This document shows positions 6,398 through 16,177 of a DNA stretch of 64,000 bases, piece by piece. The DNA lies in the IMG/VR virus record IMGVR_UViG_3300031857_000005, positions 124,001 to 188,000 of that record; one strand, 5' to 3'. The notes beneath the pieces were generated by a model, which saw only the letters and a list, made by a program, of their open reading frames with translations, ran no database searches and had not been told where the DNA came from. Within the stretch, counting starts at the first letter, position 1. Every line of letters begins with the position of its first letter. Made by a program: the position numbers and the translations under genes.

Positions 6398-6420
6398 GAT
6401 ATTTATTGCTAAATGGTTTT

Positions 6421-8184
6421 ATGAGTTTAACTAAAGAACAGGTAATGTTGGAGTATGTAAAATGTATGAAGGATACTCCATACGCATTAAAAACATATTT
6501 ACAAACTTACGACAATACGGTATCACAATATGTCCCATTACAATTATTCCCCGATCAAGTTTCATTATTAAATGATTACGAAAGTTTTAACGAAAATATT
6601 GCATTAAAATATCGTCAAGCGGGTGTATCCACCGTAACTGCGGCATGGGTATCAAAAAAATTAGCGTTCGCAAAGAAAAATAAACCTGAAAAAATTCTAA
6701 TTATTGCCAACAAATTGGACACCTCTTTAGAGATGGCGAATAAGATTAGAGGGTTTGTTGGACAATGGCCGAAATGGGTTGGGATTGATTTTGCCGCAGA
6801 AAAAAATTCACAAAAACACTACAAATTAAATAACGGATGTGAAGTTAAAGCGGTTGCAACATCAAAGGATGCCCTTCGTGGATTTACCCCTACGGTTCTT
6901 ATATTTGATGAGGCGGCGTTTATTGAGGCGGATAGTGATTTTTGGGCGGCTTGTATGGCATCCCTATCTACAGGGGGTAAAGTAATCGTGGTATCAACAC
7001 CGAATGGTTATGATCCAATTTACTATGAAATATATGATCAGGCATTAAGAAATATGAACGACTTTAAAATTACAGAAATGTATTGGTTTAGAGATCCTCG
7101 TTACACAAAAGATTTATACTTGGTTAAAACTGAAGATATTATCCATTATTTGTTAAATAAAGAAGAATATCCTGAAGATAAAATATTAAGTTGGGAAGGT
7201 ATCCCATTTGAAACAAGAAATTATGATGATCTTAAAACAATAATGGATTCAGGTTACAAACCTTGTTCAGATTGGTTTGAAAGAATGGTTAAGAAACTTA
7301 AATATGATAAACGAAAAGTTTCTCAGGAGTTGGAATGTAACTTCCTTGGATCAGGAGATAATGTGTTTGATTCAAAGATGTTACAGACTATTCGTGAAAA
7401 TATGGTTAAAGACCCCCAAAATAAAATGATGGGAAATTCACTATGGATATGGAAGGAACCTATTGTTGGGCACAAATATATTATGGGGGTTGATGTTTCT
7501 CGTGGTGATAGTGAGGATTTTAGTACAATACAAATCATTGATTTTGATGAAAGAGAACAAGTATTGGAATACATTGGAAAAATTCCACCTGATGTATTGG
7601 CAGAAATTGCATATAAATGGGGAAATATGTATTCAGCATATATTGTAATTGATATCACTGGTGGTATGGGAATTGCAACATCAAGAAAATTACAAGAACT
7701 TGGATATAAAAATATGTATGTTGATGGTATTGATTTAAATAATACTTGGAAATACAATCCAAAAGCCCTTGATAAAATTCCTGGCATCAACTTTAATAAC
7801 AAAAGAGTTCAAATAATTGCCGCTTTTGAGGAAGGAATGAGACATAAGTTTAGGATATATAGTTCAAGGTTATATAATGAAATGAATACATTCGTATATG
7901 TGAATGGTAGACCGGATCACCAAAAAGGACATCACGATGATTTAATTATGTCCATATCAATGGCATTATATGTTGGGGAGTCCTCATTCTCAAGTTTAGA
8001 GAAAGTAACTGAACAAACTAAAGCAATGTTAGAATCTTGGACGGTAAATAATAATGAATCAGTTAAAAATGTAATTGATTTTAATCCCGTAATTCCACAT
8101 ATGAATCAAGATAGATTTAGAGATAATTCAAGTATTAGTAGAAAGGATTATGAAAACTATGGTTGGTTATTTGGTATTAGATAA
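6421..8184 (+). CDS. terL: Terminase large subunit (T4 gp17-like)
   Basis: LKYRQAGVST (Walker A region), VLIFDEAAF (Walker B), VVSTPNG (motif III), nuclease GVDVSRG and HHDDLIMS; start moved to MSLTKEQ. Confidence 0.95.
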   Translation: MSLTKEQVMLEYVKCMKDTPYALKTYLQTYDNTVSQYVPLQLFPDQVSLLNDYESFNENIALKYRQAGVSTVTAAWVSKKLAFAKKNKPEKILIIANKLDTSLEMANKIRGFVGQWPKWVGIDFAAEKNSQKHYKLNNGCEVKAVATSKDALRGFTPTVLIFDEAAFIEADSDFWAACMASLSTGGKVIVVSTPNGYDPIYYEIYDQALRNMNDFKITEMYWFRDPRYTKDLYLVKTEDIIHYLLNKEEYPEDKILSWEGIPFETRNYDDLKTIMDSGYKPCSDWFERMVKKLKYDKRKVSQELECNFLGSGDNVFDSKMLQTIRENMVKDPQNKMMGNSLWIWKEPIVGHKYIMGVDVSRGDSEDFSTIQIIDFDEREQVLEYIGKIPPDVLAEIAYKWGNMYSAYIVIDITGGMGIATSRKLQELGYKNMYVDGIDLNNTWKYNPKALDKIPGINFNNKRVQIIAAFEEGMRHKFRIYSSRLYNEMNTFVYVNGRPDHQKGHHDDLIMSISMALYVGESSFSSLEKVTEQTKAMLESWTVNNNESVKNVIDFNPVIPHMNQDRFRDNSSISRKDYENYGWLFGIR

Positions 8185-8441: not shown

Positions 8442-10268
8442 ATGGAACAAAATCAAAATAATCTAACTATTTGGCAAAGATTATCTCAAGCATTTGGTCC
8501 GAATTCTTTATTAGGTCAAGATTTACCAACATACAAACTTGATAAGACAGAGTTATTAAGAACTACAGATAAGAAAGAATACGAACTTGAAAAACTACAA
8601 ACTCAACAATCATTGTACCTATCAGGACAATGGGCAAAAATTGAGAATAATCTATATACACAAGCGATTTATTATGAACCAACAAGATTGGCTTCATTTT
8701 ATGATTATGAATCTATGGAATTTACACCTGAGATTTCTACCGCTTTGGATATCTATTCTGAGGAATCGACAACCGCAGATCAAAACGGGTATATACTCCA
8801 AATATATTCTGAATCAAAAAGAATAAAAGGAATATTAGCAGATTTGTTTAATAATGTATTGGATATTAATACCAATCTTGCAATGTGGACAAGAAACACT
8901 TGTAAGTATGGTGATAATTTTGTTTATCTAAAACTTGATCCTGAAAAAGGAATTGTTGGTTGTATGCAATTACCTAACATTGAAATCGAAAGATTGGAGC
9001 GAGGTATGGCAGCTAAATCAACAAATGCTGAAGTTGATCCCAAATCTAAAGGTTTAAGATTTCATTGGAAGGTTAAAGATATGGAATTTAATTCTTGGGA
9101 GGTTGCTCACTTTAGATTATTGGGTGACGATAGAAAACTTCCTTATGGAACATCTATGCTTGAGAAGGCAAGAAGAATTTGGAAACAGTTAATGTTGTCT
9201 GAAGATGCGATGTTAATATATAGAACATCAAGAGCACCTGAAAGAAGGGTGTTTAAAGTGTTTGTTGGAAACATGGACGATAAGGATGTTGAACCATATG
9301 TACAAAGGGTTGCAAATAAGTTTAAACGAGATCAAGTGGTTGACTCAAAAACAGGAAATGTTGATTTAAGATTTAACCAAATGGCGGTGGATCAAGATTA
9401 TTTTGTACCTGTTAGAGATGCTACACAAACAATGCCGATTGAGACATTACCAGGAGCTCAAAACTTATCTGAAATTGCGGATATTGAATATATCCAAAAG
9501 AAATTGGTAACCGCATTGAGAGTTCCAAAGGCATATTTAGGATTTGAAGAGGTAGTTGGTGACGGTAAAAATCTATCATTACAAGATATTCGTTTTGCAA
9601 GGACTATTAATAAAATTCAAAAAAGTATGATTGCAGAAATGAATAAAATTGCAATCATTCACTTGTTCTTATTAGGTTTTGAAGACGAGTTACAAAACTT
9701 TACATTAGGACTTACTAACCCATCAAAACAAGCCGATTTGTTAATGGTTGATGTATGGAAAGAAAAAGTTCTTTTATATAAAGATTTGGTTACTGAGATA
9801 CCAAACACAATTCAACCAACATCAGCAACTTGGGCTAAGAAACATATATTCGGTTTCTCTGATGAGGATATTAAATTAGATGTACAACAAATTAGATTAG
9901 AGAGAGCAGTTGCTGCCGAACTTACAAATACACCAACAATTATTACACATACAGGAATGTTTGATACTGTTGATAAATTATACAAAACTAAATCAGGATC
10001 AACTCAAACTGCAGGTGCGGCACCAGCAGAAGGAGGAGGGGAACCACCTATGGGTGGAGGAATGCCACCGATGGGTCCTGAGCCAGGTGGAGGAGCGGAA
10101 CCACCACTACCAGGAGGAGAAACATTACCTGAAAATAAAGAAAAAAATAATTTAAATATTTTATTAGAAAGTGATGATATTCATGGTGATTCGTACATTG
10201 ACTTAAGTAGAGCGAGAAATTCTTTAGGTTCAATTGAGGATGAATTGAGCAAATTGTTAAGAGATTGA
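8442..10268 (+). CDS. Portal protein (T4 gp20-like)
   Basis: PYGTSMLEKARRIWKQLMLSEDAMLIYRTSRAPERRVF, DYFVP, IETLPGAQNLSEIADIEYIQKKL..ALRVPKAYL. Confidence 0.95.
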   Translation: MEQNQNNLTIWQRLSQAFGPNSLLGQDLPTYKLDKTELLRTTDKKEYELEKLQTQQSLYLSGQWAKIENNLYTQAIYYEPTRLASFYDYESMEFTPEISTALDIYSEESTTADQNGYILQIYSESKRIKGILADLFNNVLDINTNLAMWTRNTCKYGDNFVYLKLDPEKGIVGCMQLPNIEIERLERGMAAKSTNAEVDPKSKGLRFHWKVKDMEFNSWEVAHFRLLGDDRKLPYGTSMLEKARRIWKQLMLSEDAMLIYRTSRAPERRVFKVFVGNMDDKDVEPYVQRVANKFKRDQVVDSKTGNVDLRFNQMAVDQDYFVPVRDATQTMPIETLPGAQNLSEIADIEYIQKKLVTALRVPKAYLGFEEVVGDGKNLSLQDIRFARTINKIQKSMIAEMNKIAIIHLFLLGFEDELQNFTLGLTNPSKQADLLMVDVWKEKVLLYKDLVTEIPNTIQPTSATWAKKHIFGFSDEDIKLDVQQIRLERAVAAELTNTPTIITHTGMFDTVDKLYKTKSGSTQTAGAAPAEGGGEPPMGGGMPPMGPEPGGGAEPPLPGGETLPENKEKNNLNILLESDDIHGDSYIDLSRARNSLGSIEDELSKLLRD

Positions 10269-10289
10269 TATTTATAAATAAAAAAGATT

Positions 10290-11006
10290 ATGAAATTTGG
10301 TTTATTAAAATCACAGATAGAAAATATATTGATTGAGTCATATAAGAACGAATCAATAAAAGATAATATGTTTATCTTTAAAGAGTTGGTACTTAAAAAC
10401 AAAAACATTAGTAGAATGTTTTATTTATATGACGAGTTAAATTCTAATAAAGGACTTAATGAGTCCATTGCTAGTGAATATATAAATCAAAGTATTATTG
10501 TTTATGAAAATTTAACCAATAAAATTAACCCTAACCAATTGAGAGAAATTCAATCGTGGGTGGGACACATACAATGTGAAAATAACTACACATTGGTGGA
10601 TGATTTGTTTTCTAACAATGTTACAAATTTAGAATCTAAAATTAAAAGTAAAAATACAATTTTAGAGAATCTAAAGAAAGAACCAAAAAAAGAAAAAGAG
10701 ATTATTAATGTCCCAATAAAAACTATGGTTAGTGTTGCAAACAAAACGGCATCAAACTATATTGAAAGTTTAAACGAATCAGATAAAACTGAACTGAAAA
10801 AACTTTTGTCATCTGATGATGAAACTATAAAGGAGTCTTACTTAATCCTTAAAGGAAAAGTAATTTCTAAATTAGAAAGACTACAAGAAAGCGAGCAAGA
10901 TAATGATGTAACTTCTAAAATAGACGAAACAATACAGAAAATTCAAAATGAATCTTTTGATAAGGTTGGTTATTTTAAGTTACAAAAATTGAATGAAAAT
11001 CTTTAA
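10290..11006 (+). CDS. Hypothetical protein (head module)
   Basis: ORF track; follows portal; upstream TATTTAT. Confidence 0.75.
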   Translation: MKFGLLKSQIENILIESYKNESIKDNMFIFKELVLKNKNISRMFYLYDELNSNKGLNESIASEYINQSIIVYENLTNKINPNQLREIQSWVGHIQCENNYTLVDDLFSNNVTNLESKIKSKNTILENLKKEPKKEKEIINVPIKTMVSVANKTASNYIESLNESDKTELKKLLSSDDETIKESYLILKGKVISKLERLQESEQDNDVTSKIDETIQKIQNESFDKVGYFKLQKLNENL

Positions 11007-11188
11007 TCGTTCATAAATTTTTGACGATAAATAGCTCTGTTCTTAATTTCTCGTTTTGAGATTGACTTCTTTTTAAATTCTTTTCTACCATTGAGTAGAG
11101 AATTTTGACGAGTCCTAATAACTTTACTTTTTAGTTCTTTAAGGGCTTTCTCTATATCCCCATTTTTATTCACTCTAACTATTAACAT
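11003..11188 (-). CDS. rpsU: Phage-encoded 30S ribosomal protein bS21 (Bacteroidota type)
   Basis: MLIVRVNKNGDIEKALKELKSKV...RKEFKKKS..KRE...RAIYRQ aligns without gaps to Bacteroidota bS21 as recalled (MLII..K.GENIDRALK..K.KF...F.KPS..R...KA.Y). Confidence 0.88.
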   Translation of the reverse strand: MLIVRVNKNGDIEKALKELKSKVIRTRQNSLLNGRKEFKKKSISKREIKNRAIYRQKFMND

Positions 11189-11228
11189 TATAATTTTTTA
11201 TTGGTTTATTGGTATTTGATATATATCA

Positions 11229-11236
11229 CAAAAATA
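11229..11236 (-). promoter_or_regulatory. Bacteroidota housekeeping -7 element (TAnnTTTG) upstream of rpsU
   Basis: Minus strand reads TATTTTTG ~40 nt upstream of the bS21 start; -33 element not clearly seen. Confidence 0.4.
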
Positions 11237-11279
11237 CTTATTTTTTTGGAAAATAAACGCGATAGTATGAGAAACATCT

Positions 11280-11747
11280 ATGAAAAAAGGAAAAACCGCC
11301 AAAATTAATGGTTTTAGAACATCAAAGGTAGTCTATGGGACGGTAGACTCAAAAGAATTTAAATCACTTTATCTTAATTTACAAACTTGGGTGGAACCAA
11401 AAGAAGACTATGAGAATTGGGTAAGAATTACACAAAATATGTGCCGATCAATTAAACATTCAGTCTATGACAATATAGATAAATCATTATTTGATGATAA
11501 ATTTATTGTGGACATGGATTTAAGAACAAGTGGTTTACATATAAAGAAAAAATCATTCTTAAATCTTGAGATAAACTTATTTTTAATAGATGAGGTAGAT
11601 TTCAAGGACATGAAACTAAAAAGAAAATTAAAAAGTATTATTAAAGGAGTTTATGATGATGTATTAAATAAGAACGAACATTTTAAATTTTATTTGACAA
11701 AAAACGGGAATATAAAAAAACCAAAGGTAAAAATGGAGAAAGTTTAA
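11280..11747 (+). CDS. Hypothetical protein
   Basis: ORF track, 155 aa. Confidence 0.75.
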   Translation: MKKGKTAKINGFRTSKVVYGTVDSKEFKSLYLNLQTWVEPKEDYENWVRITQNMCRSIKHSVYDNIDKSLFDDKFIVDMDLRTSGLHIKKKSFLNLEINLFLIDEVDFKDMKLKRKLKSIIKGVYDDVLNKNEHFKFYLTKNGNIKKPKVKMEKV

Positions 11748-11770
11748 TATTTATATAGAAAACTTTTGAT

Positions 11771-12499
11771 ATGAACCAAAACAGAATATTAGGACCGAAT
11801 GAAACCGGCAGAGGAATTCTTATTGAATACGATGCCGGTTATATTGATCCTTCAGACAAATATAATTCAGATATAATTAAAGAATCTAAAAACTTTTTAG
11901 ATCACTCAAAACCATTTGAGTTCTATGCGGTGTTACAAAAATACAATACCCCAAATAGAAATGGTAGAGTATATCCTGAGAAAGTATTAAAGCGTGAAGC
12001 AGAAAATTATAAGAAGATGATTGAGAAGGGAACTGCATTGTCAGAACTTAATCACCCTGAATCTTCATTAATTGATTTAGACAGAGTTTCCCATTTAATT
12101 ACTGAAGTATGGTGGGATGGACCTGTATTGTTAGGTAAGTTAAAATTATTAACAAGTCCAGGATTTCACGAAAGTGGTATCTGTTCTACTAAAGGAGATT
12201 TAGCGGCGAACTATTTAAGACAAGGAGTTACTTTAGGTATTTCTTCTCGTGGTGTTGGTTCACTTAAAAAAGTGGGAGAACAAAATGAGGTACAGGATGA
12301 TTTTGAATTAATTTGTTTTGACTTAGTATCATCACCATCTACTCCTGGTGCATATCTTTTCTTAGATAAAAACGACAGAATGAAGTTTGACGAGAATCTT
12401 GAGGAAGATAAAAAAATGGCAGTGGAAAGAAATGTTGGTAGTACGGGAAACAAATCACTTGACTTAATGAAGCGTTTATCCGATTATTTGGATAAATAA
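11771..12499 (+). CDS. Prohead core protease (T4 gp21-like)
   Basis: NRNGRVYP, ELNHP, LGISSRGVGS, FDLVSSPSTPGAY. Confidence 0.93.
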   Translation: MNQNRILGPNETGRGILIEYDAGYIDPSDKYNSDIIKESKNFLDHSKPFEFYAVLQKYNTPNRNGRVYPEKVLKREAENYKKMIEKGTALSELNHPESSLIDLDRVSHLITEVWWDGPVLLGKLKLLTSPGFHESGICSTKGDLAANYLRQGVTLGISSRGVGSLKKVGEQNEVQDDFELICFDLVSSPSTPGAYLFLDKNDRMKFDENLEEDKKMAVERNVGSTGNKSLDLMKRLSDYLDK

Positions 12500-12505
12500 A
12501 AATTT

Positions 12506-12721
12506 ATGGAACAAGGAGAAAAATATTTTGTGGCAAAGATCACTTCTGATTTGTTAGATACAGAATCGGGTAAAGTTAAAAAAGTAAGAGAAGAAAAATT
12601 AGTTTTGGGATATTCCCCAACTGATGTGGAAGCTAAAGTTACTAAAGTATATGAAAACTATACAATGGATTGGAGAATCACTTCAATTACAGAGAGTAAA
12701 ATTGATGAAGTAATTGAATAA
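12506..12721 (+). CDS. Hypothetical protein
   Basis: ORF track, 71 aa. Confidence 0.7.
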   Translation: MEQGEKYFVAKITSDLLDTESGKVKKVREEKLVLGYSPTDVEAKVTKVYENYTMDWRITSITESKIDEVIE

Positions 12722-12741
12722 ATTACTAAAGATTAAATTAT

Positions 12742-12770
12742 AAGGATGGACAAATGTTCATCCTTTTTTT
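12742..12770 (+). terminator. Intrinsic terminator
   Basis: aaggatggaca-aa-tgttcatcctt followed by a T-run. Confidence 0.7.
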
Positions 12771-12864
12771 ATGCTCAAAATTTAATTTTTTTTATCTAAA
12801 AATAGTATTAAACTGATTTTTTTGAAAATGTCAAGTATTTATCTGTAAAACTATTCAAAAAATA

Positions 12865-14265
12865 ATGAGCAAAAAAGAATCATTAGTAGAAGATACATTT
12901 ATCCAATTAAAGAATTTGGAGGATGTTATCGCGGAAAACGCACAAGGAATACTTGCATCAACAATGAAGCAAGAAATCAAAGAATTAGTAAAAGAATCTC
13001 TGAACGAACAAGAAGAGGAAGATGAGATTGATTTAGATGCTGAGGTTGATACCGACGCTGATAACGACGAAATGGAAATGGATATGGATTTCGACGATGA
13101 AGACATGGAAGTGAATACTGATATGGATTTCGACGATGAAGATATGGATATGGACATGGATGTCGAAGATGATACCATTGATTTAACAGGAGCCTCAGAT
13201 GAAGAAATTCTTCGTGTATTTAAGGCAATGGGAGATGAAGATGGAATCATTGTAAAAAAAGATGATGAAATGATACATTTATCTGATGATAATGAAGATG
13301 TAGAATACATCATCCAACTTGGAGAATCTGACGAAGACGAAATGGAATTGGACGAAATGTACGATGACGAAATGGATTTTGAAGACGAAGACGAAATGGG
13401 CTTTGAAGACGAAATGGATTTTGGAGACGAAGAAACTGAAGGAGTTATTTATGAGTTAGAACTTGACGACATGGGTAACGAAGAAGAAGAACTTGACATG
13501 GATGACATGGAATCTATTGAAGATGATTATTTCGACATGGAAGAAGAGTATGTTATGGAATCCTCAAAATTCAAATCTAAAGGAGTTGGAATGGGTAACG
13601 CATCAAAATTCAAATACGGTAAAAAACCTAACCAAGAAGGTGGTTTCGATGTTAAGAAAAAACAAGGAACTAGAGGTGTTGGAATGGGTAAAGCTAAATT
13701 TGAATATAAAGAGGAAGTTAACACTGGTAAAGAACCTAAAAAATCTACAACAATTAAAAAGGTAGAGACTAAAGAGGCTTCAAGAACATTAGGTTCAGGT
13801 AAAAGATTTGGTAGAAAAGGTTTAGACAAACCTAAAGCAGCACCAAGACATTTACGAGTTGAATCTACTGACGGTGAATTAAACTTACTTAGAGAAAAAA
13901 ATGAAGAGTATAGAAAGGCACTTAACCTTTTCAGAACAAAGTTAAATGAAGTTGCGGTATTCAATTCAAACTTAGCTTACGCTACGAGATTGTTTACAGA
14001 ACATTCTACAACTAAACAAGAAAAGATTAACATCTTAAGAAGATTTGACAGTGTAGATACTCTTAAAGAATCAAAAAATCTTTACAAATCTATTAAAAAC
14101 GAACTTTCAAACACAAGTACTACGGATAACACAATCACAGAATCAATTGAAAGAAATGTTGTTAAGACTCCATCAAGTGGATCGGCAGTAAATCTAATTG
14201 AATCTAAGACTTATGAAAATCCACAATTCTTGAGAATGAAAGATTTAATGGGAAAATTAAAATAA
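12865..14265 (+). CDS. Prohead core/scaffolding protein (T4 gp22 position) with long acidic D/E/M tract
   Basis: Lies between protease and MCP; coiled-coil C-terminus; DMDFDDED repeats (gatatggatttcgacgatgaaga at 13081 and 13120). Confidence 0.75.
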   Translation: MSKKESLVEDTFIQLKNLEDVIAENAQGILASTMKQEIKELVKESLNEQEEEDEIDLDAEVDTDADNDEMEMDMDFDDEDMEVNTDMDFDDEDMDMDMDVEDDTIDLTGASDEEILRVFKAMGDEDGIIVKKDDEMIHLSDDNEDVEYIIQLGESDEDEMELDEMYDDEMDFEDEDEMGFEDEMDFGDEETEGVIYELELDDMGNEEEELDMDDMESIEDDYFDMEEEYVMESSKFKSKGVGMGNASKFKYGKKPNQEGGFDVKKKQGTRGVGMGKAKFEYKEEVNTGKEPKKSTTIKKVETKEASRTLGSGKRFGRKGLDKPKAAPRHLRVESTDGELNLLREKNEEYRKALNLFRTKLNEVAVFNSNLAYATRLFTEHSTTKQEKINILRRFDSVDTLKESKNLYKSIKNELSNTSTTDNTITESIERNVVKTPSSGSAVNLIESKTYENPQFLRMKDLMGKLK

Positions 14266-14299: not shown

Positions 14300-16177
14300 A
14301 TGGGAGCATTATTAGAATCAGGTCTTGTTGGTAATATTGGGTTAAAGCACCTTAAAGTTATCAAAGAAGATACTATTAACAAATGGGACAAATTAGGGTT
14401 CCTTGATGGACTTAAAGGACATCTAAAAGAAAATGTAGCACAGTTGTATGAAAACCAAGCTTCTTTCTTAATTAACGAAGCAACTTCTGAAGGTTCTAAC
14501 GGAGCGTTCGAAACAGTTGTTTTCCCTATCGTAAGAAGAGTTTTCTCTAAATTGTTGGCTAACGATATCGTATCAGTACAAGCAATGAACTTACCTATCG
14601 GTAAATTGTTCTACTTCGTACCTCGTATCCAAGGTTATGAAACAGGAACTGAACAAACTGCAGCAAATAACTATGTTGGTGGTGGTTCACACTACGCACC
14701 TGTAGGAGCACCTAATAACAACGGTGGATCAGTTGATTCATCAGTAATTGGAGCTGGATACCCTGACAATGCAAATGCATATAAGAAAAATCTTTATGAT
14801 TTATTCTACGAAGGTGCTGAAGGACAATTAGATCCTCCAGGATTGTTTGATTACTCAAAAGGAAAATGGTCAGCGGTAACTGCTGAAACTAGCGTACAAG
14901 CATGGAGTAATGGTGATTTGGATAATTATGTTTACTCATCAGGTTCTCAAGTAAGAAAAGTTATTGTTAAACTTTGTGGATGGAATCAAATTGAAGGTTA
15001 CGGAAAATTAATAGGTCCTGATGGAAATGAGGTTGATTCTGAAACTTTCCTTTCTGACTTAAGAATTTTTGCACCTAGAGGAAATGCTGCTTTAACAGGT
15101 ACAACACCTTGTAATGTTGTTTATAACGCTGAAGGTAATCCAAATTCACTATTGTTTAGAGTTGTTACTCAACAATATGGTAAAGGAATCGTTAAATATG
15201 GTTCTAACCGAGGAACTACATTCCCTGAAACAGGTAATGGTGGTTCTTACTACAACATCTGTGATGGTAATGGTTGTATCTATTTAGAAGTAGATTTATC
15301 TTGTCCAGCATGTGCTGACTGTGGTGACACTTCATTAGATGGTTACACAGGAACTACATTGACGGCTAACTTGGCGTCAGGTACTTCATTCTACGCGGCT
15401 TGGAGAACTTATGAGAACCTTGAGTTCCAAGATCAAATTGGTGAGGTTTCTTTTGATTTAGAATCTGTTACAGTTTCTGTATCTGAAAGAAAACTAAGAG
15501 CACAATGGTCACCTGAAATGGCTCAAGATGTTGCGGCATTCCACAATATCGATGCAGAGGCTGAATTGACAGCGTTGTTGTCAGAACAAGTAGCAGCTGA
15601 AATCGACCGTGAAATTCTTCGTGACTTGAGAAAAGGAGCGGCTTGGAATCTTCGTTGGGATTACAACGGATGGAGAAGAATCCAACAAACTACATCTTAC
15701 ACTCAGAAAGATTGGAACCAAACTTTGATTACTGCGATTAACCAATTGTCAGCACAAATCCACAAATCAACATTGAGAGGTGGGGCTAACTGGATCGTTG
15801 TATCTTCTGAGGTTTCTGCAATCTTCGATGATTTAGAATACTTCCACGTATCTAACGCATCTCCTGAGCAAGATCAGTATAACATGGGTATCGAAAGAGT
15901 TGGTACTTTAGCAGGACGTTACCAAGTGTATCGTGATCCTTACTTCCCACCAAACCAAGTTTTGATTGGACACAAAGGAACATCGTTACTTGACACAGGT
16001 TACATCTACGCACCGTATGTACCTCTACAATTGACACCTACAATGTACAATCCGTTCAACTTCACACCTATCAAAGGTATTATGACAAGATACGCTAAGA
16101 AAATGGTTAATAACCGTTTCTACGGTCGTATCACTGTTGATGGAGTTCGTACATTCGATTTAAGAGAATTGAGATAA
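14300..16177 (+). CDS. Major capsid protein (T4 gp23-like) with large central insertion
   Basis: FPIVRRVFSKLLANDIVSVQAMNLPIGKLFY; RKLRAQWSPEMAQD...HNIDAEAELTALLSEQVAAEIDREI; YAPYVPL; GIMTRYA. Confidence 0.96.
   Translation: MGALLESGLVGNIGLKHLKVIKEDTINKWDKLGFLDGLKGHLKENVAQLYENQASFLINEATSEGSNGAFETVVFPIVRRVFSKLLANDIVSVQAMNLPIGKLFYFVPRIQGYETGTEQTAANNYVGGGSHYAPVGAPNNNGGSVDSSVIGAGYPDNANAYKKNLYDLFYEGAEGQLDPPGLFDYSKGKWSAVTAETSVQAWSNGDLDNYVYSSGSQVRKVIVKLCGWNQIEGYGKLIGPDGNEVDSETFLSDLRIFAPRGNAALTGTTPCNVVYNAEGNPNSLLFRVVTQQYGKGIVKYGSNRGTTFPETGNGGSYYNICDGNGCIYLEVDLSCPACADCGDTSLDGYTGTTLTANLASGTSFYAAWRTYENLEFQDQIGEVSFDLESVTVSVSERKLRAQWSPEMAQDVAAFHNIDAEAELTALLSEQVAAEIDREILRDLRKGAAWNLRWDYNGWRRIQQTTSYTQKDWNQTLITAINQLSAQIHKSTLRGGANWIVVSSEVSAIFDDLEYFHVSNASPEQDQYNMGIERVGTLAGRYQVYRDPYFPPNQVLIGHKGTSLLDTGYIYAPYVPLQLTPTMYNPFNFTPIKGIMTRYAKKMVNNRFYGRITVDGVRTFDLRELR

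What the first reader, a model, noticed from the sequence alone, without database searches (positions are those of the whole stretch)
11003..11236. Phage bS21 in the head module retains Tyr54, the residue linked to anti-Shine-Dalgarno sequestration in Bacteroidota
Seen in sequence: a 61-aa antisense bS21 between portal and prohead-protease genes, with Tyr at position 54 (R-A-I-Y54) and a TAnnTTTG-type -7 box upstream. Established knowledge (recalled): bS21 occurs in large freshwater Bacteroidota phages next to structural genes, and Flavobacterium bS21 Tyr54 helps occlude the 16S anti-SD. Several basic host residues appear replaced (e.g. KELKSKV vs KRYKRKF). Inference: the phage copy keeps ribosomes in SD-independent mode, suiting its SD-less, A-rich leaders, and may bypass host rpsU autoregulation.
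Basis: partly seen in the sequence, partly recalled or inferred. Interest (0 to 1): 0.6.

Follow-up and report, generated by a model that had tools for sequence, protein, structure and literature searches.

The report
Phage copy of ribosomal protein bS21
A 304-kb freshwater-type jumbo phage carries its own copy of small ribosomal protein bS21, with the tyrosine that Bacteroidota ribosomes use to hide their anti-Shine-Dalgarno tail; the gene is real and conserved, but this gene, its position and this tyrosine were already described for this phage group in 2022.

Summary
Window 11003-11188 (minus strand) encodes a 61-aa bS21 homologue (Pfam 28.1 bits, cut-off 27). It lies between the T4-type portal and prohead protease genes. 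It aligns without gaps to Flavobacterium johnsoniae bS21, so its Tyr54 matches Tyr54 there.

In 70 distinct relatives from IMG/VR this position is always aromatic (Y63/H4/F3), and the gene is under purifying selection (median dN/dS 0.26). The phage's genes lack Shine-Dalgarno motifs and show the Bacteroidia-type adenine pattern (-14 to -11, and -3). The bS21 gene itself has no SD.

The TAnnTTTG box exists (11229-11236), but this pattern occurs about once per 1.1 kb per strand here. Only its conserved position in 14 of 19 relatives gives it some weight.

The finding is not new. Chen et al. 2022 (PMC9723584) described this phage group, the reverse-strand bS21 in the same gene block, Tyr54 and the divergent N-terminal helix. 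McNutt et al. 2023 discussed phage bS21 against rpsU autoregulation. Ribosome incorporation remains untested.

Small additions from this work:
- bS21 was deleted at least twice within the clade.
- A recurrent promoter-like motif, ATATTTAT, lies just upstream of many genes.
- A GOLLD, tmRNA and tRNA island lies nearby in the genome.

The parts
11003..11188 (-). bS21 (rpsU-like) coding sequence, 61 aa, pI 10.9, net charge +13
   Evidence: dN/dS median 0.26 over 836 pairs of relatives.
11027..11029 (-). Codon TAT for Tyr54
   Evidence: Gap-free alignment to Tyr54 of F. johnsoniae bS21, 7JIL chain z. The position is Y63/H4/F3 in 70 distinct phage homologues.
11189..11279 (.). 91-nt divergent intergenic region between bS21 and the 155-aa gene. 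The bS21 leader is A/T-only with no SD (A at -3, -6, -11, -13, -14).
11229..11236 (-). TATTTTTG, a match to the Bacteroidota -7 promoter box TAnnTTTG
   Evidence: the pattern is common in this genome; it is conserved in position in 14 of 19 relatives. Promoter function is not shown.
11216..11225 (-). TATATATCAA element, the best-conserved part of the intergenic region. It is a one-base variant of the genome's recurrent ATATTTAT motif.
   Evidence: present in all relatives, and kept in loci that lost bS21; not repeated elsewhere upstream of genes.
10290..11006 (+). 238-aa all-helical hypothetical protein. It equals 'bS21_CN' (fam498) of Chen et al. It is convergent with bS21, and their stop codons overlap in TTAA (11003-11006).
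   Evidence: (gene order in the paper's supplement).
11280..11747 (+). 155-aa hypothetical protein (fam656 of Chen et al.), divergent from bS21. Alpha/beta fold with no informative match.
6406..8184 (+). Large terminase
8442..10268 (+). T4 gp20-type portal protein
   Evidence: Pfam Portal_T4, E 4e-75.
11771..12499 (+). T4 gp21-type prohead protease (Peptidase_S77)
12865..14265 (+). 466-aa Asp/Glu-rich protein at the position of the T4 gp22 scaffold (assigned by position only)
   Evidence: sequence. No family match.
14300..16177 (+). T4 gp23-type major capsid protein
   Evidence: Pfam Gp23, E 1.4e-74.

Best explanation
This is a functional phage-encoded copy of ribosomal protein bS21 of the Bacteroidia type. 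It belongs to the published group of about 300-kb freshwater myophages that carry bS21 on the reverse strand inside the terminase-portal-protease-capsid block. Shown here: the protein's identity, Tyr54 in register, purifying selection, fixed synteny, and SD-less phage mRNAs with Bacteroidia-type A-rich initiation regions. Inferred: the protein is made late in infection from its own SD-less initiation region, so its synthesis does not depend on the host's SD-based rpsU feedback. It then binds host 30S platforms in place of, or in addition to, host bS21. With Tyr54 stacking on A1534, it keeps the 16S 3' tail sequestered. This keeps ribosomes fully loaded with bS21 and efficient on SD-less phage messages while host gene expression declines.
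For: Identity: Pfam 28.1 bits. The family profile hits only P. gingivalis 9I5V and F. johnsoniae 7JIL bS21 among all PDB chains, at E about 1e-11 (9I5V organism from PMC12123416). Register of Tyr54. Conservation: always aromatic in 70 distinct proteins; dN/dS 0.26. Synteny: identical in all 48 loci found through bS21 and in 58 of 61 loci found through the protease. Genome traits match Chen et al.: 304 kb, 31.0% GC, 24 tRNAs (PMC9723584). No SD enrichment; A peaks at -14 to -11 and at -3 as in F. johnsoniae (PMC6847099). No SD before bS21 in any relative. Literature: ribosomes lacking bS21 release the ASD and work poorly on SD-less mRNAs; Y54A raises translation of SD mRNAs about 3-fold (PMC9976891; PMC13000457). 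bS21 is transcribed together with late structural genes in lake metatranscriptomes (PMC9723584).
Against: The NCBIfam equivalog cut-off is not met. Residue 55, a van der Waals contact (Ile) in F. johnsoniae, is Arg here and varies in the family. Helix 1 carries invariant phage-specific residues (E/D18, L19, S/G21, V23, I24, Q28), which suggests more than simple replacement. bS21 was deleted at least twice inside the clade, so it is not essential to these phages.
Confidence: 0.6

Rival explanations
1. Specialised-ribosome model (Chen et al. 2022). The phage bS21 replaces host bS21, and its altered N-terminal helix changes mRNA choice. Ribosomes then prefer phage late transcripts over host ones, rather than merely staying loaded with bS21.
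For: Helix 1 residues that differ from Bacteroidia bS21 are nearly invariant in 70 phage proteins: E/D18, L19, S/G21, V23, I24, Q28, against R18, Y19, R21, F23, D24, T28 in F. johnsoniae. Helix 1 net charge is +2 against +5 (and hand count). In other bacteria the SD-ASD helix runs between the two bS21 helices (PMC13000457).
Against: I found no phage-specific mRNA feature that such a helix could read. Phage initiation regions look like ordinary F. johnsoniae ones. There is no experimental support. This model is compatible with the best explanation rather than exclusive of it.
Confidence: 0.25
2. Virion or extraribosomal role. The small, very basic protein is packaged in the head, either as an internal protein delivered with the DNA or as a nucleic-acid binder. 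This would explain its place among the head-assembly genes.
For: The gene sits where T4 has its prohead-core genes, between portal and protease (T4 gene order from my own knowledge). pI is 10.9. Chen et al. raise packaging as a possibility.
Against: It is on the opposite strand with its own upstream region. It retains the Bacteroidia ribosome-contact signature, including Tyr54. Loss of the gene leaves the head module intact.
Confidence: 0.07
3. Passenger gene with no present function, picked up from a host and on its way to decay.
For: There were two independent losses, one a clean 124-nt deletion. The Pfam score is marginal.
Against: dN/dS is 0.26, and 116 intact copies were found in loci from many samples. 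The slot and the upstream element are fixed. The gene is highly transcribed according to PMC9723584.
Confidence: 0.03

Closest known systems
bS21 of the freshwater 'bS21 phages', clades a-e (Chen et al. 2022, ISME Commun 2:31, PMC9723584)
   Same: Reverse-strand bS21 between two hypothetical families inside the TerL-portal-protease-MCP block. Genome about 300 kb, about 31% GC, up to 25 tRNAs. Tyr, or rarely His or Phe, at position 54. Divergent N-terminal helix at positions 21, 23, 24/25 and 28. Predicted Bacteroidota hosts.
   Different: Nothing essential. I could not tell whether this exact 304,365-bp record is one of their 61 genomes: its length and two identical IMG/VR ids are absent from the held supplements. 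The paper does not mention promoters, SD statistics, loss variants, GOLLD or tmRNA.
Host bS21 of Bacteroidia (F. johnsoniae 7JIL chain z; P. gingivalis 9I5V)
   Same: Same length class (61 against 63-64 aa), collinear over residues 1-57, Tyr54 signature, and a short, only mildly basic C-terminal part.
   Different: HMMER E-values for the single sequence are only 4e-5 and 0.012. Helix 1 is less basic. Arg replaces Ile at position 55. The gene has no SD, whereas F. johnsoniae rpsU has an extended SD used for autoregulation (PMC9976891).
Pelagibacter phage HTVC008M bS21 and other viral bS21 (Mizuno et al. 2019, PMC6375957)
   Same: A phage-encoded bS21. HTVC008M bS21 was reported to enter E. coli ribosomes (as cited in PMC9976891).
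   Different: Different host phylum and no link to ASD sequestration. I did not compare the sequences here. tblastn of the window protein against 50,697 GenBank phage records found only two huge uncultured phages, at 43-48% identity.

Membership tests
Ribosomal protein bS21 (Pfam PF01165 / TIGR00030) | Sequence match above the curated family threshold | tested here: met
   Pfam 28.1 bits against 27, which is marginal. The family profile against solved bS21 chains gives E 1e-11. The NCBIfam equivalog cut-off is not reached: 20.8 against 28.95.
Ribosomal protein bS21 (Pfam PF01165 / TIGR00030) | Small (about 55-71 aa), strongly basic protein | tested here: met
   61 aa, pI 10.9, net +13.
Ribosomal protein bS21 (Pfam PF01165 / TIGR00030) | Physically part of the 30S subunit | not testable with these tools
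   Needs ribosome proteomics or cryo-EM from infected cells.
Bacteroidia-type bS21 (ASD-sequestering) | Signature Tyr at F. johnsoniae position 54 | tested here: met
   Gap-free alignment. Y63/H4/F3 in relatives.
Bacteroidia-type bS21 (ASD-sequestering) | Ile55 contact to the 16S 3' tail (PMC7797042) | tested here: not met
   Arg55 in the window. The family has I25/R21/V15/K5/L3 at this position. This is a minor contact, not the signature residue.
Bacteroidia-type bS21 (ASD-sequestering) | Closest to Bacteroidota bS21 rather than to other phyla | tested here: met
   Only the P. gingivalis and F. johnsoniae chains pass E<=1 among all bS21 chains in the PDB.
Flavobacteriales rpsU autoregulatory unit | Extended SD upstream of the bS21 start codon | tested here: not met
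   The 40-nt leader holds no G and no purine-rich SD, in the window or in any relative. So it is a bS21 gene, but not an autoregulated rpsU unit.
Chen et al. 2022 bS21 phage group | bS21 on the reverse strand between fam498 and fam656, within TerL-portal-protease-MCP | tested here: met
   Window gene order. Same order in 48/48 and 58/61 related loci. Supplement gene order.
Chen et al. 2022 bS21 phage group | Genome 293-331 kb, GC 31-34%, 5-25 tRNAs | tested here: met
   304,365 bp and 31.0% GC. 24 tRNAs.
Chen et al. 2022 bS21 phage group | Bacteroidota host, freshwater origin | tested here: inconclusive
   Indirect only: the Bacteroidia-like initiation pattern, the bS21 affinity, and one related fragment binned in an 'uncultured Bacteroides sp.' MAG. 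I saw no sample metadata or CRISPR match.

The most novel reading that the evidence does not exclude
The phage bS21 may be a 'lock' rather than a plain substitute. Its invariant, less basic helix 1 (E18, L19, S21, V23, I24, Q28), together with Tyr54, could let it stay on the 30S platform when the extended SD of host rpsU mRNA tries to pair with the ASD; in F. johnsoniae that pairing evicts host bS21. This would shut off host bS21 resynthesis and make the ribosome takeover one-way. The natural deletion variants would then mark hosts where this lock is not needed.
Probability: 0.1. Interest if true: 0.7.

Novelty: already known. Interest (0 to 1): 0.25.

Why it matters
Phage-encoded ribosomal proteins are one of the few cases where a virus may change the ribosome itself. 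The Bacteroidia ASD-sequestration system gives a concrete read-out that can be assayed. However, the gene, its context, Tyr54 and the substitution hypothesis are already in print. This window adds another member and some supporting statistics, not a new idea. The open question is still experimental: does the phage protein enter the 30S subunit, and what does that change? The natural bS21-deletion variants found here could serve as ready-made controls for that test.

Tried and rejected
- PHROGs gave no family for bS21 or for the two flanking genes.
- tblastn of both flanking proteins against GenBank phages found no match.
- The ESM Atlas feature search for the 155-aa protein gave no usable hit.
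- AlphaFold models were built for the 155-aa protein (pLDDT 79.7) and the 238-aa protein (pLDDT 85.3, pTM 0.52).
- Foldseek against the PDB gave nothing at E<=0.001 for the 155-aa protein.
- VIA-align wide gave a best Z of 7.3, within the noise range. Type III chaperone/YbjN-like rows at Z 5.4-6.9 are only a weak lead.
- BFVD returned only uncharacterised myovirus proteins.
- I considered the 155-aa protein as a dedicated bS21 escort. I dropped the idea because both flanking genes persist where bS21 is deleted. For the same reason I did not spend the complex-prediction job.
- Sigma-70 promoter matches were at chance (12 found, 12.9 expected). Two terminator-like sites were found against 0.8 expected, neither close to bS21.
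- Rfam found nothing above threshold at 9000-13000.
- I tested TATATATCAA as a genome-wide promoter and rejected it: 4 copies against about 6 expected.
- In L064 I first read a hairpin as a terminator. The alignment showed it is the remnant 3' part of the deleted bS21 gene.
- S21 was not found elsewhere in the bS21-less records, but these are only 2-20% complete, so relocation is not excluded.
- The large protein searches were not used because the protein's identity was already settled.

Full report
**Observation**

The minus strand of window 11003-11188 holds a 61-codon ORF. No plus-strand frame is open across 11007-11279, so it is not the shadow of another gene.

- The product matches Pfam Ribosomal_S21 over residues 4-56 at 28.1 bits, just above the 27-bit gathering score.
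- It misses the stricter NCBIfam equivalog cut-off, 20.8 against 28.95.
- A profile built from 12 phage homologues removes the doubt. Among all PDB chains it matches only two bS21 proteins, P. gingivalis 9I5V (E 1.3e-11) and F. johnsoniae 7JIL (E 7.5e-11). No bS21 from another phylum reaches E 1 (the 9I5V organism is from PMC12123416).

The pairwise alignment with F. johnsoniae bS21 runs residue 1-57 to residue 1-57 without a gap. Tyr54 of the phage protein (codon 11029-11027) therefore corresponds to Tyr54 of the host-type protein.

**Context**

The window is bases 124001-188000 of a 304,365-bp IMG/VR virus record with 31.0% GC. The plus-strand gene order around bS21 is:

- large terminase
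- T4 gp20-type portal
- a 238-aa helical protein
- bS21, on the opposite strand
- a 155-aa protein
- T4 gp21-type prohead protease
- a 71-aa protein
- a 466-aa acidic protein
- gp23-type major capsid protein

The stop codons of bS21 and the 238-aa gene overlap in the palindrome TTAA at 11003-11006.

**Relatives**

A scan of IMG/VR with the bS21 protein returned 48 loci at 68-100% identity, all with the same gene order. A scan with the protease found at least 578 related loci.

From all fetched loci I recovered 116 complete bS21 genes, giving 70 distinct proteins.

- The residue aligned with Tyr54 is Tyr in 63, His in 4 and Phe in 3.
- Pairwise dN/dS has a median of 0.26 over 836 pairs, so the gene is under purifying selection.
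- Residues 17-28 are the most constrained part. At positions 18, 19, 21, 23, 24 and 28 the phage family differs from F. johnsoniae: E/D, L, S/G, V, I, Q against R, Y, R, F, D, T.

Its net charge is +2 against +5 (the host figure is my hand count). The whole protein is not less basic, at +14 against +11 over residues 1-57.

**Translation signals**

In 296 ORFs of at least 100 codons across the genome, GGAG, GAGG and AGGA occur at -20 to -4 no more often than in random genome windows. G never exceeds 14% at any leader position from -20 to -4. A peaks at 50-58% at -14 to -11 and at 58% at -3.

The pattern stays when genes with the promoter-like motif described below are left out, although G then rises to at most 17%. 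It is the pattern reported for F. johnsoniae: adenines at -14 to -11, -6 and -3, and no SD (PMC6847099).

The bS21 leader itself contains no G in its last 40 nt and has A at -3, -6, -11, -13 and -14. None of the relatives has an SD. In F. johnsoniae, by contrast, rpsU is the one gene with a strong SD, and that SD underlies feedback by bS21-free ribosomes (PMC9976891; PMC13000453). The phage gene is thus outside that circuit as far as sequence can tell.

**The -7 box**

TATTTTTG at 11229-11236 (minus strand) fits TAnnTTTG. The genome has 538 such matches on both strands, close to the expectation from base composition. Genes carry them upstream on the correct strand no more often than on the wrong strand, 61 against 71. 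A single match is therefore weak evidence.

Some support comes from its presence at the same place in 14 of 19 distinct relatives. The neighbouring element TATATATCAA (11216-11225) is conserved in all of them.

**What is known**

Chen et al. 2022 (PMC9723584) describe 47 curated plus 14 IMG/VR genomes of freshwater phages. They report:

- genomes of 293-331 kb, 31-34% GC and 5-25 tRNAs
- bS21 on the reverse strand between two hypothetical families, amid terminase, portal, protease and capsid genes
- Tyr54 in 54 of 61 genomes and an aromatic residue in all
- divergence concentrated in the N-terminal helix (Arg21, Phe23, Asp25, Thr28)
- Bacteroidetes hosts, and co-expression with late structural genes

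Their supplement gives the order fam656, fam334 (bS21), fam498, portal. This identifies their co-varying neighbour 'bS21_CN' as the 238-aa gene at 10290-11006.

- Jha et al. 2021 (PMC7797042) established the Tyr54-A1534 stacking.
- McNutt et al. 2023 (PMC9976891) showed that Y54A raises translation of SD messages about 3-fold. They also discuss phage bS21 in relation to rpsU autoregulation.
- The 2026 structure paper shows that loss of bS21 frees the ASD, and that the extended SD-ASD helix on rpsU mRNA evicts bS21 (PMC13000457).

I found no paper reporting an experimental test of a Bacteroidota phage bS21.

**Mechanism**

The best-supported reading is that the phage supplies a Bacteroidia-type bS21 from a feedback-free, SD-less initiation region during late infection. 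The protein would occupy the 30S platform and keep the ASD sequestered. Ribosomes would then stay fully loaded with bS21 and efficient on the phage's SD-less messages.

Identity, register, selection and the mRNA features are shown here. Incorporation and its effect are inferred from the F. johnsoniae literature. The invariant phage-specific face of helix 1 leaves room for the selective-translation model of Chen et al., or for a variant in which the phage protein resists eviction by the rpsU SD. A virion or extraribosomal role and a passenger gene are less likely, for the reasons given under the rival explanations.

1. bS21 is not universal in the clade. Three of 61 loci that span portal to protease lack it, while both flanking genes remain.
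   - On a tree of the three flanking proteins, the two lineages concerned sit inside different bS21-bearing clades with SH-aLRT 99-100.
   - L064 and L067, from different samples, differ from 91%-identical relatives by a clean 124-nt deletion. It removes the start and most of the gene and leaves a 3' remnant.
   - The records are fragments, so a second copy elsewhere cannot be excluded.
2. A motif ATATTTAT, often extended to ATATTTATAAATA and so containing the T4 late-promoter word TATAAATA, occurs 131 times.
   - 81 copies lie in the 8% of the genome that is intergenic.
   - 77 copies lie within 60 nt upstream of a same-strand start, with a median gap of 13 nt. These include the terminase, the 238-aa gene and the protease.
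   - The bS21 upstream element is a one-base variant of it.
3. About 15-32 kb from bS21, outside the window, the genome holds 23-24 tRNA genes, a tmRNA (118 bits) and a full-length GOLLD RNA (312 bits).

**What failed**

The two flanking proteins gave confident models but no informative fold match.

**Verdict**

Novelty: already known. Interest is low to moderate.

Noticed in passing
L064:4300-4560, L067, L085:4200-4460 (IMG/VR relatives): Three loci from three samples (two lineages) keep portal, the 238-aa gene, the 155-aa gene and the protease but lack bS21. L064/L067 show a clean 124-nt deletion relative to 91%-identical relatives L066/L075, leaving a 3' gene remnant. Both lineages are nested inside bS21-bearing clades, which means at least two losses.
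   Followed up: yes
Whole genome G000; in the window for example about 6399, 8184, 10268, 11747, 17641 (+) and 21037, 24577 (-): Recurrent motif ATATTTAT(AAATA). There are 131 copies: 81 are intergenic and 77 lie within 60 nt upstream of a same-strand start codon, in two spacing classes (4-6 nt and 13-16 nt). It contains the T4 late-promoter word TATAAATA in many copies. It is a candidate phage promoter and implies very short leaders.
   Followed up: partly
G000:C1:119352-119766 (+) and 120178-120580 (-); tRNAs at 102951-114715 (outside the window, L131): Full-length GOLLD RNA (Rfam 312 bits) next to a tmRNA (118 bits; ARAGORN tag EKEQTLIIRG) and a cluster of 23-24 tRNA genes. Together with bS21 these form a translation-related set. 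Chen et al. 2022 mention neither GOLLD nor tmRNA.
   Followed up: partly
window 11003-11006: The stop codons of bS21 (-) and the 238-aa 'bS21_CN' gene (+) overlap in TTAA, so their transcripts must overlap antisense. The similar RNA levels reported for this pair could partly reflect this overlap, depending on whether those libraries were stranded (not checked).
   Followed up: no
window 11159-11161 (codon 10, Gly): The window protein and 22 of the 70 homologues carry one extra residue in the N-terminal loop. This makes the tyrosine number 54, as in F. johnsoniae. In the other 48 it is residue 53 but in the same alignment column.
   Followed up: yes
window 12506-12721 (+): The 71-aa protein downstream of the protease is in most relatives more conserved (82-97% identity) than the protease (79-95%) or any other neighbour. 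Its function is unknown.
   Followed up: no
L130 (CAZYEM010000401.1, 2.8 kb): A fragment with the same portal / 239-aa / bS21(-) / 156-aa / protease order is binned in an 'uncultured Bacteroides sp.' MAG. Its bS21 reads KLYKSKV in helix 1, intermediate between the phage and host versions.
   Followed up: partly
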